DNA of 64,000 nucleotides from Vitrella brassicaformis CCMP3155 (taxonomy: Eukaryota > Protista > Chromerida). The DNA lies in the NCBI GenBank assembly GCA_001179505.1, contig CDMY01000170.1:62001-126000 (forward strand), given 5' to 3'. Shown here one piece after another: positions 27,136-33,148 of this stretch. The notes below the pieces were generated by a model. The model was not told the DNA's origin. It ran no database searches and worked only from the letters and a program-made list of their open reading frames with translations. Numbering within the stretch: position 1 is the first letter of the stretch; every line of letters starts with the position of its first letter. Made by a program: the position numbers and the translations under genes.

Positions 27136-27858
27136 CTGCTTCTTGGTGTACATAAAGCACCCACACATGACATGAATACATGCACATACATACGGATACA
27201 CAGCTGTCCTCCGTTTCTTCTTTGTCTGTCTTTGTCTCTCTGTGTGTTGGGTATGGTGCGGCGTGGTGCGGTGGAGTCGAGTCGAGTCGAGTCGAGTGGT
27301 GCTGTGTCTACGTGTAGCTGACAGACGGATGTCGTCAACAGGACGACAACCCAGCTGCTGGGCGAGTGGGGTGGGTAGATCGGTCGTTGGCTGACTGACT
27401 GACTGCAGCGGCCGTTTTCCACGCGTGTGGGATGGATGGATGGATGGATGCGTCATTCATGTGGATGTGAGGACAGGTAGGTACGGCCAGCTGCGGTCAT
27501 GCGTGCGTACTTCTCACCCCCCTGCCTATTTTTGGGCCTCAACACAATCAACCTACTCACGCCAATCAACGCAGAGAGAGGGGACAGATTGACATGCAGC
27601 ATCCACTCGCCCCAGGATACTACCTGCACTCAGGACCGACCAGCATCAAAGCAGCCTCAGTCACTGCACCCGTTCGTCCACCGCTGACATGACAGCCCTG
27701 GGTAAGAAGGGGATGTCTTGCTTGTGTGTCTCGTGGTTGCGATTTGTTACATGTAAACCTGCCTGCCTGTTGATTGTCTGTCCATCGCTATCCTCCATGC
27801 TCGCCAGGACACACACCGTCCTGCATGCACTGCACTTCACTCTCTGTCCCCTGGCTGG

Positions 27859-30800
27859 CTACAATCGTGGTCTGGTGAGGTCAAAGTCATATCGATGTGC
27901 CAGCAGCGCACTGTCCAGTGCCCGCATCATGGCCTGGCACCGACTGCTCAGCTCGCTGTCCGCGGCCTCCTTCTCGCCGCCACCATGGAGTGCAATGGAG
28001 CTTGGCGAAGGGGATGGGGCTGTGGGCGTCGGCTGCTGCAACTCCAGGGCCAGGTCTTCGTAAAGGCTGGAATGCTCACTCCTGCACCACACACACTCAT
28101 GGAGGAAGGTGCATTCATTTGTCTATGGGTGTGTGTGTGGATGTGTGTTGGGGGGGNNNNNNNNNNNNNNNNNNNNNNNNNNNNNNNNNNNNNNNNNNNN
28201 NNNNNNNNNNNNNNNNNNNNNNNNNNNNNNNNNNNNNNNNNNNNNNNNNNNNNNNNNNNNNNNNNNNNNNNNNNNNNNNNNNNNNNNNNNNNNNNNNNNN
28301 NNNNNNNNNNNNNNNNNNNNNNNNNNNNNNNNNNNNNNNNNNNNNNNNNNNNNNNNNNNNNNNNNNNNNNNNNNNNNNNNNNNNNNNNNNNNNNNNNNNN
28401 NNNNNNNNNNNNNNNNNNNNNNNNNNNNNNNNNNNNNNNNNNNNNNNNNNNNNNNNGGGGGGGGGGAGTTACTTGATGAGGTGTATGAGCTGTTCCTGGA
28501 ACATGGTGATGGACCGGAAGGTTGGGTGGGAACCGATGAAGAAGTAGAGGAGGGCCGCCCGCATCAAGATGACCATCTCCACCAGCCTGAAGGGGCGGTC
28601 GTGCCTCTGCGCAAGGATCCATGGCAGGGCGTCAAGCGACTGCAGCTCCTCCTCCTCCCAGAAATCGACGTGAATCCTGCAACACACATCGACAAACAAG
28701 TCATCGGCCATATATATCACCCACCCCTCTCCTCCCTGCTCACGCGCACCTGAGCTCCTTCTGGAGCTCCAATCGATCGTGCTCACTCTGACGCTGCACA
28801 CACACATAGATGCCATGCCACAACAGGTAGGTTCTTCCGTGGCTCGGCTGTCGACGGGTGAATGTCCTCCCTCTCGCTCAGCTCACTTGGTGCATTTTCC
28901 TCCTGACGTCCCTTGCGAGGTGGCGCAGCAGTGGGGGCTGGAAGGGAGGGGGCGGTCCCAGCGGCAGATGGGCCAAATCCAACGACGGATACAGACCTGT
29001 TTGTGAAGATGGATACACCACACTACACCAGCAGCATAGCTGCATATGCCCGTGTGTTTGCGGACGGACGGACCTTTCCGTGTCGGCTCAGACGCCAAGT
29101 GGATGCACACGTCGGACTGGGGCGCTGAACAGACAGGGGAAACAGAGAGAGAGCCACAGACACGGTAGTTTCTTTGTCATAGCCGCCCGCCGACCCACCT
29201 ACCTAGTGTGGCGGCACACTCGCTGGCGACAGTGTGAGCCCGCACCGATGCGGCGTCTCGGCCCTCAGGGACGGTGTCGATGACGCCTACCACAGTCAGG
29301 CTGCCCGGCTCGCTGTCCGATCGACGACCTGACATCACACACCGATAGGTACGCACACACACGCGTGTTGATGACCCACACGTGTGTCTTACCTGCGTGG
29401 GTCATCAACGACGAGTAGAGAGACGTTGAGGTCTGCAGACAGACAGACAGACAGACAGACAGACACGGCACATGCCCACAGTCGTGTGTGTAAAGACCTT
29501 ATTATATGTTGGGCTTACGAGTGGAAGCTGGCATTGGGCGTCATCCTGGAGCTCACGGGTCAACACGCCGTGACCTAATCAATCCACACAGCCACCCCAC
29601 CCAGACACACACAATGGTCACCGTCCGTCCACCCCTGCCCGCATTTCTCACCCGCCCATCCCACCTGTGAGGTCATCGACGATGAGCATGACCTTCCTGC
29701 CCTCATCCCTGGCCCGCCTGGCCACATGGACTGCCACCAGCACACTCAGGTACCGAGCAAACAGACCCACGCTGCCGTCACATCGGATGTCCAACACACA
29801 CGGGCTGGTGGGGGCCTTGACGGTGGTACTGGGAGAAGAGGATATGATGGTGGGGGTGTGTACGACGAGGTCGGGGGGCGACTGGGAGGCCAGCAGGGGC
29901 AGCAGCAGGGAACTCTTCCCTGACCACAAACGGTTGGTTGAAATGAATAATGCATGGCGGGCCCTCTCTCTGTCTCTCTCGTGTGTGCGATGGATAGATA
30001 CCAGTGCCGTATGGCCCGACCACAACCACACGATGGCCCTCAGCTGCGTGAATACACACACACACACACACACACACACCGGGTCACTGTGGGTCGACTT
30101 CTCCCTTGCTCTGTCTCTGCCTGCCTGCCTACCAATGGGGTGGAGCACATCGATGGCCATCACGCCCGTCCGAATGAATGACGGCACTGTGGTGCGGGCG
30201 ATGGGAAAGACAGACGCCGAACGACCCAGAGAGAAGAGGGATGGACCCGGCTGCAGTGCACACAGCACAGCCAACAGAGAGAGAAAAGACAGGCTGCATG
30301 CCATGCAGCAATAACTATCTGGTCTCTGAGCCTCTCCTCTCGGCACACCGACCTGACCTGTTCTCTCGGCATCTCTGCCGTCAATGTGAGCGGGCTCACA
30401 GACACGCCGCCAGCCACAGGCCTGGTGCCACATCATCCCCACACACGCATCAATCATCTCACGGATGCTCGAACGAATCGATCTTGCTTCTTTCATACGT
30501 GGGGAGGACGTTGAGAGTGCCGCCCAATGTGCATGCCTCCCCCACCCCGACAGACACACACTGCGATGGCGGGTTGTCCGCTGGGGCAGGGGGGCTGTCC
30601 AGGAGACCCACTGTGCAGTAGGCCGCATCCAACTCGCACACAAGACCGCGGCCTCCTGTTTAATGAATGGCAGGCAACCAAAGGACAAACGAGAGGTCAC
30701 GTCATGCGAATGTCTTGTGCTGTGCGTGGTATTCCCGTTCGTCAGTCAGTCATGACAGTCACCCTGCTCGAAGTGGACGACAGAGCCCACTCTTGCCTCC

Positions 30801-31129
30801 TGGATGCCCGACACCCGGACAAAGCTGCCTGCACGAGCAGAGGCGGCAACACAGACAGAGGCAACCAACACATGGATAGATCCATCAGCAATGGGAAGAT
30901 CCGTGTCGGTCACCCACCCACCATGCTGCGCGACGACTTTCCCATCGAAAGAGCCGCCTTCGAAGCCTTCAGAGAACAGCTTCTCCAGCCCCGACACGCT
31001 CTCCATGCCAGCCGCATTGTGGCGAACACGGCTCACACGGGTAAAGTGCCGAGCGTGGCGAATGACTGATGGATTCTTGTCAAATGCACGAGCGCATGAA
31101 TGAAGCAGACGAAAGAATGTGACAGGCAT
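27859..31129 (-). CDS. Divergent F1-ATP synthase alpha-subunit-like protein with a putative mitochondrial presequence
   Basis: Spliced motifs run collinear with F1-alpha: GKVVAQHGSFVRVSGIQEARVGSVVHFEQG; RTGVMAIDVLHPIAEGHRVVVVGPYGTGKS (Walker A); VMLIVDDLT; GSLTVVGVIDT; SDVCIHL...GLYPSLDL; WILAQRHDRPFRLVEMVIL. The leader is Arg-rich and poor in acidic residues. Confidence 0.8.
28157..28456. other. Assembly gap (300 N), flanked by poly-G, apparently inside one intron
   Basis: The flanking exons join in phase 2 (AA|C = Asn), so no exon has to be missing. Confidence 0.95.
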
Positions 31130-31162
31130 CACGGATCTGCCAGTTTCGGACACTTCCTCAAA

Positions 31163-31191
31163 AGCTCGCCAAAGGCAAAGCTAAGCTCGCA
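31163..31191 (+). promoter_or_regulatory. Candidate promoter motif AGCTCGC(C/A) x2
   Basis: Lies in the 150-nt gap between divergent ATGs 31129 and 31280. Confidence 0.5.
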
Positions 31192-31279
31192 GACCCGGCG
31201 ATGAAGAAACCGGCTCTGGATGCATGACGAAGGCTGTATCGCAACGCTAGGACCACTGATCTGACGATCCAAGCACAAA

Positions 31280-33148
31280 ATGGTACGAACTCACACAATC
31301 ACATGAAGTACCGGGACTCATCAACTCATGCCCCTCCCCTCGTCCGGTGTCTGATGTGCTGTGATGCGTGTGTGTGCAGGATGAAGCACTCCGTCAGGAG
31401 CGTGCTGCCCAGTACCGACAAGCGCATGGGCAGCCGGCCGGGCCTGACCAGGTGTTCCTCCTCCCTGGCAATGCCCGCAACTGGATGCCCAACTGGGGCG
31501 GCGTTGGCGGGGTGCTGGGCACATCCCGCAACAGGAAGTGGCTCATCGGTGGCGGCTGCTGCTTCCTCGTGGTGGTCTTGATCTTGATTCTGCTCTCGCT
31601 GGGCGCCGTCCGACCGACCGAGTACGGCCTGGTCTACAATGCGATAACCAAGAACGTCGACACGAGGCACGTCTATCACGGCGGGCGGCACTTCATCTGG
31701 CTGTTCCACTCGTTCATCCCCTTCCCGGCAATTTTGAGAACGATAGAGTTCTCTGACTATCATCACATTCCCGGTGCGGCGCATTTCGATCCGCTCAAGA
31801 CGAGGACGCCCGAGGGGCTGCAGATCGTCCTGTCTGTCGCCCTGCAATACCGCCTGATCAAGTGAGTCGGCAGGCACACAGCGGAGAAACGCTGCGTGTG
31901 GTGAGGTGTCGGTCTCCGTATGTGAGGGTCTGTGTGTGTGCGTGTTATATAGGGATGAGGTGGGGACTCTGTACACGAGGGCGAATGTGCAGTATGAGAG
32001 CCTCTTCATGCAAAATGCCAGAGATATCCTGCTCAAGGTGTGTTGGGTGCACGCACAGAGGGAGGGAGGGAGGGAGGGAAGGACACACAAACATGGACAC
32101 ACACAGAGCCACATGGGGGTGGGTGTTTTCAGACTGTGTCTCGTTACAACGCCACGAGCTGGTGGCTGGAGCGAGCCAGGATCGGCCGGGACATGCTGGA
32201 GCGAGCCAATGCCACGCTCACATCCCTCCACGCACACGTGAGCACACAACTATTGCCACCAACACGCAGCGAATGGTGTGAGGATGTATATATGTGTATG
32301 TGTATTGTGCCGGCTGTGTGGTTTGGCTGAGTCAGGTGGAGATGCTCCAGATCCTGCGCATCGACTTGCCGGCCGATTGGGAGAAGAAGATTGTCGAGAC
32401 GCAGGTCGCCCAGCAGCAGATACAGACCGAACAAAACAAACAGCAGGTACTTATCTGCCCACACACGCACAACGATCTTTCCCTCCTCCATGGATGCCCC
32501 CCTCTGTCTCTGTGTGTGCAGGCGGCGCGCATCCGTGCGCAGACCAAGGTGATTGGTTCCGAGTTCGCCAGAAACGTCACCGTCATCAACGCGGGGGCAG
32601 TCGCCAACGCCACATACCTCAAACAAAAGGCAAAGGTCAGCCTGGCCGGGCTTGCTGATGTGATGTGTGTGGGTCAATCCAATCCACACATGGAGCCATG
32701 GTCGTGTGTGTGTGTGTCTGTGTGTGTGCAGGCCGAGGCGGTACAGCGTCAGCTTGACACGGAGGCCTACACTCTGGCTATGGCTGCACAGCTGCTGGGG
32801 GCAACGCCAGAAGAGATCGTCAGGTCAGCCACACACGCACACAACACGACACACACACACACACAGAGACCACGGTAGCTATGCAGTGCACGTACCGGCC
32901 GTCTGTTTGGTCTGCTGCTTTCATGCAGGTATCAGCAGATGGCGACGTACGCCTCGCTGGCCAACGCGACTTTCCTCTACGGCATGGACAAGTCCTTGAC
33001 GCCACTGATCAACATCCCCTCGGCCCCGCCCATCGGCAACCCACCTCCCCCGCCCCTCCCCAACGGCCCCATACAGCCCAACGACTCCCGCTCTCTCCTG
33101 CAGACCTGTGAGGACGAGTCATGCTGGAACAGACCGCTGCTGCTTTGA
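31280..33148 (+). CDS. SPFH/band-7 (prohibitin/HflC-like) domain membrane protein
   Basis: N-terminal TM (LIGGGCCFLVVVLILILLSL), AVRPTEYGLVYN, KTRTPEGLQIVLSVALQYRL, coiled coil (VETQVAQQQIQTEQNKQQAARIRAQT), Pro-rich tail. The first coding exon is probably ATG only (31280-31282). Confidence 0.85.

What the first reader, a model, noticed from the sequence alone, without database searches (positions are those of the whole stretch)
27859..31129. Full-length but highly divergent F1-alpha paralog: P-loop kept, arginine-finger segment lost
Seen: all three alpha domains are present in order and Walker A is intact (GPYGTGKS). However, [28 protein letters not shown] becomes DDLTGHGVLTRELQDDAQCQLPL, and AINVGLSVSRVG becomes SLDLAHLPLGPP. 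Established: canonical alpha is very highly conserved, and the Arg in SVSRVG is the finger that completes the beta catalytic site. Inference: this is not the working alpha subunit, but a nucleotide-binding pseudo-subunit, such as an F1 assembly factor, regulator or placeholder in the myzozoan mitochondrion.
Basis: partly seen in the sequence, partly recalled or inferred. Interest (0 to 1): 0.72.

Follow-up and report, generated by a model that had tools for sequence, protein, structure and literature searches.

The report
Divergent ATP synthase alpha paralog (ATPα2)

Summary
A 15-exon minus-strand gene (ATG 31129, stop 27859) gives an uninterrupted 587-codon ORF. Spliced transcript contigs from three public runs support every intron. 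The assembly gap (28157-28456) lies inside the last intron and transcripts bridge it in frame. The protein is closest to F1 alpha over all three domains and groups with alpha in a tree, not with beta, FliI or Rho, on a branch about 18 times the median. Walker A (GPYGTGKS) and Walker B (DDL) are kept. The RRPPGRE segment is lost and the arginine finger aligns to Gly408. A canonical alpha with all motifs lies on contig C300 and a plastid atpA on C467, so this is an extra paralog. A related Vitrella-like contig carries an intact ortholog with conserved splice sites and dN/dS 0.22, so it is not a pseudogene. There it forms a small F1-like complex without Fo and is needed for F1-Fo stability. The family is therefore already known. 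Orthology to the Toxoplasma and Chromera genes could not be tested here. Added here: the finger loss, purifying selection, and a missing 41-residue presequence-like N-terminus.

The parts
27859..31129 (-). Complete CDS of the alpha-like paralog (ATPα2-type): 15 exons, 587 codons plus stop
   Evidence: Spliced transcript contigs; joined ORF without stops; residues 42-587 are identical to the public protein P0012 of Vitrella brassicaformis CCMP3155
30922..31129 (-). Exon 1. Its first 41 codons (31129-31007) are an Arg-rich N-terminal extension absent from the public model, probably a mitochondrial presequence
   Evidence: Transcript contigs reach 31146 and 31135, and the ATG at 31129 is the first in them. 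Composition is 7 R, 1 K, 4 H, 1 D, 0 E. The extension is conserved in the relative L025 while the 5' UTR diverges with indels
30763..30828 (-). Exon 2 (N-terminal beta-barrel)
30499..30655 (-). Exon 3 (N-terminal beta-barrel)
   Evidence: alpha N-domain profile 19.6 bits
30358..30421 (-). Exon 4
30133..30250 (-). Exon 5 (start of the nucleotide-binding domain, RTGVMAIDVLHPI)
30002..30043 (-). Exon 6. It carries the first part of Walker A; GPYGTGKS spans 30017-29912 across intron 6
29665..29919 (-). Exon 7: the end of Walker A (KS), a Ser/Thr/Pro-rich insert, and Walker B (LIVDDLT)
   Evidence: Pfam PF00006 on this exon alone, E = 0.0023
29519..29574 (-). Exon 8: HGVLTRELQDDAQCQLPL, the segment replacing [24 protein letters not shown]
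29393..29432 (-). Exon 9
   Evidence: Placed from contig length (96 nt between flanking exons) and the only GT..AG solution
29203..29328 (-). Exon 10 (GSLTVVGVIDT, matching GSLTALPVIET of alpha)
29074..29124 (-). Exon 11
28887..28996 (-). Exon 12: SLDLAHLPLGPP in place of AINVGLSVSRVG. The codon at 28958-28956 (Gly408) sits where alpha has the arginine finger
28750..28793 (-). Exon 13
28473..28676 (-). Exon 14 (helical C-terminal domain)
   Evidence: alpha C-domain profile 7.1 bits, above 2000 of 2000 shuffles
28082..28472 (-). Last intron. It contains the assembly gap 28157-28456, so its true length is unknown
   Evidence: The joint 28080>28472 (cut +1) appears in X1, X6 and X7 transcript contigs with 204 nt on the shorter side
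27859..28081 (-). Exon 15: a paralog-specific C-terminal extension with a predicted long helix, then the stop codon
   Evidence: helix 508-534 of P0012 at pLDDT 70-83
27731..27858 (-). 3' UTR up to a poly(A) site at about 27731
   Evidence: The X1 contig ends at 27731 with a loose TTTTTTTT, which is poly(A) on the minus strand

Best explanation
The gene is very probably the Vitrella brassicaformis member of the recently described ATPα2 family. This is a nuclear-encoded, very fast-evolved duplicate of the mitochondrial F1-ATP synthase alpha subunit.

Shown here:
- It is transcribed, correctly spliced and single-copy.
- It is intact in a related lineage and under purifying selection there.
- It keeps the alpha three-domain layout with Walker A and Walker B.
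- It has lost the arginine finger and the RRPPGRE segment, which line the alpha-beta catalytic interface.
- It coexists with a fully canonical alpha1.

Inferred:
- The Arg-rich 41-residue N-terminus sends it to the mitochondrion.
- As in Toxoplasma, it pairs with beta (plus gamma, delta, epsilon) in a small F1-like complex without Fo, OSCP or IF1, and this supports stable F1-Fo assembly.
- Without a finger, an alpha2-beta pair should be a poor ATPase or none, so the protein would act as a holder, chaperone or regulator of beta and the central stalk rather than as a catalytic partner.
- It may still bind nucleotide through its P-loop.
For: Gene and expression:
- Spliced contigs in three runs, with GT..AG introns and the gap inside an intron.
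- A 587-codon ORF. Public protein P0012 is identical from Met42 onward.

Alpha affinity:
- PF00006 scores 50.3 bits, above the cut-off.
- The best PDB hits are all F1 alpha, aligned 20-483.
- The best NCBIfam hit is F1 alpha over its full length.
- All 12 full-length alphas outscore FliI, beta and Rho in blastp.
- The ML tree puts it with alpha at 94/90.
- Each domain scores against alpha-only profiles above 2000 shuffles.
- An MSA-guided AF2 model (pTM 0.65) matches only alpha chains among the top 50.

Motifs.

Extra paralog: canonical alpha1 is on C300, and no second copy exists in the genome.

Selection:
- The ortholog on L025 has exons 1-14 intact and all splice sites conserved.
- dN is 0.024 and dS 0.111, so dN/dS is 0.22 (Fisher p = 2e-9).
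- Exons are 95.6% identical against 90.2% for introns.

Function by homology: bioRxiv 10.64898/2026.09.01.748362 reports alpha2 in Toxoplasma, coccidians, Chromera and Vitrella. It is mitochondrial and co-purifies with beta, gamma, delta and epsilon but not Fo, OSCP or IF1. The complex runs at about 250-300 kDa. Knockdown releases F1 from Fo, and alpha1 cannot complement.
Against: - Orthology to TGME49_236140 and CVEL_1661 was not tested by sequence. Those sequences could not be fetched, and the word searches found only the Vitrella protein itself. The link rests on the preprint's statement and on this being the only divergent alpha in the genome.
- The position inside the alpha clade is unresolved, and the 6.19 branch invites long-branch artefacts.
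- The alignment around the finger lies in a Pro-rich, poorly conserved stretch.
- The AF2 model is only moderately confident (mean pLDDT 63) and leans on an alpha alignment. The single-sequence model failed with pLDDT 35.
- Toxoplasma alpha2 is about twice the size of alpha1 and is reported as under neutral to diversifying selection. The Vitrella protein is alpha-sized and under purifying selection, so properties may differ between lineages.
- No localisation, interaction or nucleotide-binding data exist for Vitrella.
Confidence: 0.8

Rival explanations
1. It is a decaying duplicate (pseudogene) of alpha that happens still to be transcribed.
For: Extreme divergence: it keeps only 53 of 192 alpha-conserved positions, and the branch is 18 times the median. 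Key catalytic-interface motifs are lost.
Against: The ORF runs uninterrupted through 15 exons. All introns are spliced correctly in three runs. The ortholog in a lineage about 12% diverged in DNA is intact with conserved splice sites, and dN/dS is 0.22 with p = 2e-9. The degenerate motif segments themselves are nearly identical between the two lineages. The Toxoplasma family member is required for fitness.
Confidence: 0.03
2. It belongs to another branch of the alpha/beta ATPase superfamily (FliI/T3SS ATPase, V-type A or B, or Rho) and only resembles alpha superficially.
For: NCBIfam FliI and T3SS models score 37-46 bits on the N-terminal plus P-loop part, not far below TIGR00962 alpha at 47.5. 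SsaN and V-type chains appear in the PDB list at about 1e-6.
Against: Only alpha models and chains align over the full length, 20-484. Every full-length alpha outscores every FliI, beta and Rho. The tree groups it with alpha and apart from a beta+FliI clade and Rho. The C-terminal domain scores against an alpha C-domain profile.
Confidence: 0.04
3. It is a working alternative alpha that builds a catalytically active alpha2-beta hexamer or variant F1, for example a stage- or condition-specific isoform.
For: Walker A and Walker B are intact, the overall fold is alpha-like, and the gene is expressed and constrained.
Against: The arginine finger and the RRPPGRE segment are absent. In Toxoplasma the alpha2 complex is smaller than F1, lacks Fo and OSCP, and alpha1 and alpha2 are not interchangeable.
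Confidence: 0.06
4. It is a Vitrella-lineage duplication independent of the coccidian alpha2, that is, a convergent divergent alpha with a possibly different role or compartment (for example the plastid).
For: Orthology was not tested here. It differs from Toxoplasma alpha2 in size and selection regime. The position within alpha is unresolved.
Against: The preprint's phylogeny and text place chromerid and coccidian alpha2 together and show that Chromera alpha2 is not plastid-located. The N-terminus has no signal-peptide-like hydrophobic core, and a plastid atpA already exists.
Confidence: 0.07

Closest known systems
ATPα2 of Toxoplasma gondii (TGME49_236140) and Chromera velia (CVEL_1661), bioRxiv 10.64898/2026.09.01.748362
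   Same: A highly divergent paralog of mitochondrial F1 alpha (about 20-27% identity to alphas) that coexists with a canonical alpha1. The preprint states it is present in Vitrella. It has an alpha-like core fold and paralog-specific helical extensions.
   Different: The Vitrella protein is alpha-sized (587 aa) whereas the Toxoplasma one is about twice alpha1. Here dN/dS is 0.22, against the reported neutral to modestly diversifying selection in Toxoplasma. Complex membership and function are untested in Vitrella. The preprint text does not discuss Walker motifs or the arginine finger.
Canonical F1-ATP synthase alpha subunit (NCBIfam TIGR00962 / PRK13343; Pfam PF02874 + PF00006 + PF00306)
   Same: Same order of N-terminal barrel, P-loop nucleotide-binding domain and helical C-terminal domain. 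Walker A GxxxxGK[ST], Walker B DDL and the GSLT motif are kept.
   Different: It scores 59 bits against a cut-off of 554. The arginine finger (SVSRVG) becomes Gly, RRPPGRE is lost with a 5-residue deletion, and there are a 10-residue insertion, Ser/Thr/Pro-rich inserts and a C-terminal extension. Only 53 of 192 conserved alpha positions are retained.
F1 assembly chaperones Atp11p/Atp12p (yeast; ATPAF1/2 in mammals) — from established knowledge, not tested here
   Same: Proposed working analogy: a protein that occupies an alpha-beta interface of an unassembled F1 subunit so that it stays soluble and inactive until assembly.
   Different: They have unrelated folds and are not P-loop proteins. 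ATPα2 is itself a subunit homolog and sits in a stable complex that also holds gamma, delta and epsilon.
Bacterial F1-like alpha paralogs (Mycoplasma MMOB1660 gliding-motor alpha-like subunit, MSC_0619 type, N-ATPase alternate alpha)
   Same: Divergent alpha-family proteins recruited to non-canonical F1-like complexes. MMOB1660 scores 47.7 bits.
   Different: These are bacterial, the hits are partial (N-terminus plus P-loop) and far below cut-offs, and there is no evidence of a specific relationship.

Membership tests
ATP synthase alpha/beta superfamily (Pfam PF00006) | Nucleotide-binding domain scoring above Pfam's gathering threshold | tested here: met
   P0012 scores 50.3 bits, E = 3e-13, against a cut-off of 29.5. 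Exon 7 alone gives E = 0.0023.
ATP synthase alpha/beta superfamily (Pfam PF00006) | Walker A GxxxxGK[ST] and Walker B acidic residues | tested here: met
   GPYGTGKS at residues 214-221 and LIVDDLT at 297-303, aligned to GDRQTGKT and VYDDLSK.
Canonical F1 alpha subunit (TIGR00962 / PRK13343 equivalogs) | Whole-protein score above the curated cut-off | tested here: not met
   59.2 bits against 554 for PRK13343, and 47.5 against 484 for TIGR00962.
Canonical F1 alpha subunit (TIGR00962 / PRK13343 equivalogs) | Arginine finger in SVSRVG that completes the beta catalytic site | tested here: not met
   The column is Arg in at least 90% of 26 alphas and Gly367 in P0012 (Gly408 of the full model). No basic residue lies from -15 to +10.
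Canonical F1 alpha subunit (TIGR00962 / PRK13343 equivalogs) | Three domains in alpha order: N barrel, nucleotide-binding domain, helical C domain | tested here: met
   Alignments to alphas are colinear over 20-483. Alpha-only domain profiles give 19.6, 35.9 and 7.1 bits, each above 2000 shuffles. The C domain is weak, with no hit on its own in the PDB. Foldseek hits are all alpha, but the model was built from an alpha alignment.
Canonical F1 alpha subunit (TIGR00962 / PRK13343 equivalogs) | Groups with alpha rather than beta, FliI or Rho in a tree | tested here: met
   The alpha plus this protein clade has 94/90 support, and beta+FliI and Rho are separate. V-type was not sampled in the tree.
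ATPα2 (bioRxiv 10.64898/2026.09.01.748362) | A highly divergent alpha homolog (about 25% identity) present alongside a canonical alpha1 in a coccidian or chromerid | tested here: met
   Identity to alphas is 20-27%. Canonical alpha1 is on C300. The source organism is Vitrella brassicaformis CCMP3155. It is the only such gene in the genome.
ATPα2 (bioRxiv 10.64898/2026.09.01.748362) | Sequence orthology with TGME49_236140 and CVEL_1661 | not tested
   The sequences were not obtainable with these tools. The word searches and the exon-7 HMMER search returned no coccidian or Chromera protein.
ATPα2 (bioRxiv 10.64898/2026.09.01.748362) | Mitochondrial localisation | tested here: inconclusive
   The 41-residue N-terminus has 7 R, 1 K, 4 H and 1 acidic residue and is conserved in L025. 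No predictor or experiment was available.
ATPα2 (bioRxiv 10.64898/2026.09.01.748362) | Forms a beta-gamma-delta-epsilon complex without Fo, OSCP or IF1 and is needed for F1-Fo stability | not testable with these tools
   Shown only for Toxoplasma. The complex prediction was not run because the spliced mitochondrial beta has no single reference.
FliI / T3SS ATPase (TIGR01026) | Full-length match above cut-off and the T3SS-type C-terminal domain | tested here: not met
   Best score is 45.9 bits against 587, covering only the N-terminus and P-loop. It separates from FliI in the tree.

The most novel reading that the evidence does not exclude
Loss of the arginine finger and the RRPPGRE segment is the defining functional change of ATPα2. 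On this reading the paralog docks on the catalytic face of beta and holds a beta-gamma-delta-epsilon module in an ATPase-dead state until it is handed to alpha1 and Fo. It would then be a subunit-derived assembly chaperone or safety catch for F1. The alpha-sized, purifying-selected Vitrella form would represent the ancestral state, and the doubled, fast-evolving Toxoplasma form a later elaboration. The preprint text does not discuss the finger or Walker motifs.
Probability: 0.35. Interest if true: 0.5.

Novelty: already known. Interest (0 to 1): 0.3.

Why it matters
[quoted passage not shown] The ATPα2 family shows that core bioenergetic machinery can spawn a lineage-specific, essential accessory subunit in apicomplexans and their algal relatives.

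For this window the biology is no longer new. The free-living Vitrella copy still gives useful comparative points:
- It is compact, about the size of a normal alpha.
- It is clearly under purifying selection.
- It keeps the P-loop but lacks the arginine finger, which fits a non-catalytic holding or assembly role.
- The public gene model appears to miss the targeting sequence. That matters for anyone expressing or localising the protein.

Tried and rejected
- Exon-by-exon Pfam scans were nearly blank; only exon 7 hit, at E = 0.0023. Exon-wise genome searches with PF00006 and with plastid AtpA missed the gene entirely.
- The one HMMER search of 1.84 billion representatives, run with exon 7, found only a read-through gene call from a Vitrella relative (P0001) and low-complexity noise. 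It found no coccidian or Chromera ortholog.
- Word searches with full-length P0012 and with its P-loop region 130-270 found only P0012 itself. This says little, because Toxoplasma alpha2 is probably outside the length filter.
- The preprint has no supplementary files held as text, so no accession for the Vitrella alpha2 could be checked.
- Single-sequence AlphaFold2 failed, with pLDDT 35.
- The C-terminal domain alone finds nothing in the PDB by sequence.
- Complex prediction was not run. The physiological partner, mitochondrial beta on C385, is a spliced gene with no single reference, and plastid beta would be the wrong partner.
- The joined 587-residue model was built only inside scripts and was never sent to a search tool. 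Searches used exon references, one stop-free frame reference (window:29651-30745:-) and then the public protein P0012.
- The pseudogene, FliI/V-type/Rho and active-isoform readings were considered and rejected, as set out under the rival explanations.
Full report
**Where and what.** The window is G000:C170:62001-126000 of a 72.7 Mb, 1064-contig assembly. The public protein that matches the gene is labelled Vitrella brassicaformis CCMP3155. This agrees with an earlier scan note. The finding lies on the minus strand.

**Gene model and the gap.**
- Contigs of four public runs were laid on 27500-31400. Runs X1, X6 and X7 give spliced contigs and X2 is genomic.
- Twelve joints have CT..AC ends, which are GT..AG on the minus strand. 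Two further introns sit in (CAGA)n and (CA)n repeats where joints were dropped. I placed them from the contig lengths between flanking exons and the only GT..AG solutions.
- The 15 exons join into 1764 nt: 587 codons from the ATG at 31129 to the stop at 27859.
- The joint 28080>28472 skips the whole N run 28157-28456. The assembly gap is therefore inside the last intron, and the transcript is continuous and in frame across it.
- One contig ends at 27731 followed by poly(A).

**How the searches were run.**
It exists only in scripts.
- Exon-wise Pfam scans gave one weak PF00006 hit, on exon 7.
- An HMMER search of 1.84 billion representatives with exon 7 returned only P0001, an unspliced gene call from a relative.
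- A stop-free frame reference containing exons 5 and 7 then retrieved P0012, the 546-residue public model. P0012 is identical to residues 42-587 of my model and served as the reference from then on.

**Family assignment.**
- P0012 passes Pfam PF00006 at 50.3 bits against a cut-off of 29.5.
- Against PDB sequences, about the top 35 hits are all F1 alpha chains. The best is E = 2.3e-12, aligned 20-483 to 35-483. T3SS and V-type chains appear only near 1e-6.
- The best NCBIfam model is F1 alpha over its full length, but at 59 bits against a cut-off of 554. FliI and T3SS models match only the N-terminus and P-loop, and beta scores 14 bits.
- In blastp, all 12 full-length alphas score 54-80 bits. 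This is above FliI (35-48), beta (32-43) and Rho (28-34).
- An IQ-TREE analysis (LG+C20 PMSF, 23 rows) puts the protein with the 13 alphas at 94/90 support, apart from a beta+FliI clade and Rho. Its terminal branch is 6.19, against a median of 0.34. Its place within alpha is unresolved. V-type sequences were not in the tree.
- Profiles built from 26 alphas alone score the N domain at 19.6, the nucleotide-binding domain at 35.9 and the C domain at 7.1 bits. Each is above all 2000 shuffles.
- The C domain alone finds nothing in the PDB. The N domain alone finds only alphas, weakly.
- Single-sequence AlphaFold2 failed. With the alpha alignment A1 it gave pTM 0.65 and mean pLDDT 63. The top 50 Foldseek hits are all F1 alpha chains with TM 0.6-0.73. 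That model leans on the alpha alignment, so it is supportive rather than independent evidence.

**Motifs.**
- Walker A GDRQTGKT becomes GPYGTGKS (residues 214-221). The Gly, Lys and Ser/Thr positions are kept.
- Walker B YDDLSK becomes VDDLTG.
- [28 protein letters not shown] becomes QDDAQCQLPLTSTSLYSSLMTHA, with a 5-residue deletion.
- GSLTALPVIET becomes GSLTVVGVIDT, followed by a 10-residue insertion.
- GIRPAINVGLSVSRVG becomes GLYPSLDLAHLPLGPP, with Gly408 in the finger column and no basic residue nearby.
- Only 53 of 192 positions conserved in at least 90% of alphas are retained.

**It is an extra paralog.** The genome has a canonical multi-exon alpha at C300:79372-82276 carrying every canonical motif. 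It also has plastid atpA and atpB on C467, mitochondrial beta on C385 and further PF00006 genes, probably V-type, on C243 and C477. No second copy of the divergent gene exists.

**It is not a pseudogene.**
- P0001 comes from ENA assembly ERZ893784, contig k147_2253543 (L025). L025:3384-6173 aligns to window 31193-28457 at 87.7% identity.
- Projected exons 1-14 are intact. All acceptors are AG and all donors GT, except one GC.
- Protein identity is about 94.5%. dN is 0.024 and dS 0.111, so dN/dS is 0.22. Fisher p is 1.8e-9.
- Exons are 95.6% identical and introns 90.2%.
- The degenerate motif segments are nearly unchanged between the two lineages.

**N-terminus.** Transcript contigs reach 31146 and 31135, and the first ATG in them is at 31129. 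The extra 41 residues have 7 Arg, 1 Lys, 4 His, one Asp and no Glu. In L025 they are conserved apart from a few changes at positions 3-5 (a one-codon deletion and two substitutions), with only synonymous differences elsewhere, while the 5' UTR just upstream is full of indels and mismatches. I infer that the public model starts 41 codons too late and misses a mitochondrial presequence. No localisation predictor was available.

**Literature.**
- bioRxiv 10.64898/2026.09.01.748362 (2 September 2026, also PMC13684500) describes ATPα2 (TGME49_236140). It was found by crosslinking mass spectrometry as a partner of beta.
- It is about 25% identical to alpha1. [quoted passage not shown]
- It is mitochondrial and expressed at about 1/20 of the alpha1 level.
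- It co-purifies with beta, gamma, delta and epsilon but not with OSCP, IF1 or Fo. The complex is about 250-300 kDa and also holds TGME49_230910.
- All alpha2-beta crosslinks fit one interface resembling the catalytic interface.
- Knockdown releases F1 from Fo and collapses cristae and membrane potential. Alpha1 cannot complement.
- The preprint text has no mention of an arginine finger.
- I could not fetch the Toxoplasma or Chromera sequences. Orthology rests on the preprint's statement and on this being the only divergent alpha in the genome.

**Mechanism.**
- Shown: an expressed, constrained alpha-fold paralog with a P-loop but no finger, alongside a canonical alpha1.
- Inferred: it is imported into the mitochondrion.
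- Inferred: it binds beta at a catalytic-type interface, as in Toxoplasma.
- Inferred: lacking the finger and the RRPPGRE segment, it cannot support ATP hydrolysis there. It would hold a beta-central-stalk module in an inactive state, in service of F1-Fo assembly or stability.
- Nucleotide binding by its own P-loop is plausible but untested.

**Differences from Toxoplasma alpha2.** The Vitrella protein is alpha-sized rather than doubled, and it is under purifying rather than relaxed or diversifying selection.

**Verdict.** Novelty is low because a preprint precedes it. The modest additions are the motif-level reading, the selection test, placing the gap in an intron, and a corrected start codon.

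Noticed in passing
window 31007-31129 (-): The public protein model (P0012, 546 aa) starts at Met42 of the transcript-supported ORF. The upstream 41 codons look like a mitochondrial presequence and are conserved in the relative L025.
   Followed up: yes
window 31168-31865 (+): An SPFH/Band 7 family gene (PF01145, E = 3.6e-5) is transcribed divergently, with its own GT..AG splice joint 31281>31379. Its transcript contigs begin only a few tens of bases from the 5' end of the alpha-like gene, suggesting a shared bidirectional promoter.
   Followed up: partly
L025:1-3383 versus G000:C410:58556-61963: In the related Vitrella-like contig (ENA ERZ893784), the DNA upstream of the alpha2 ortholog carries genes with DSHCT and CBM_20 hits. 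It matches a different contig of this genome (C410, 82% identity), not the window. This is either a rearrangement breakpoint next to the gene or a chimeric or mis-scaffolded assembly.
   Followed up: partly
L025:3384-6173: A second Vitrella-like lineage, about 88% identical in DNA and about 94.5% in this protein, exists in a public metagenome assembly. It is useful for dN/dS tests on other genes of this genome. Intron 9 there has a GC donor instead of GT.
   Followed up: partly
window 29429-29471 and 30044-30087: (CAGA)n and (CA)n microsatellites lie inside introns 8 and 6 of the gene. They break genomic Logan contigs and caused splice joints to be dropped from the read table.
   Followed up: yes
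P0012 (ESM Atlas look-up): Among the nearest embedding clusters are all-eukaryote clusters, mostly Chlorophyta, of 490-640-residue PF00006 proteins with only partial PF00306 coverage. Divergent alpha-like paralogs may therefore exist outside the apicomplexan-chromerid lineage. This is a lead only, because no sequences were retrievable.
   Followed up: no
window 27500-27731: X6 and X7 transcript contigs continue at least 390 nt beyond the poly(A) site seen in X1 at 27731. This is either a longer 3' UTR isoform or an overlap with the downstream neighbour's transcript.
   Followed up: no
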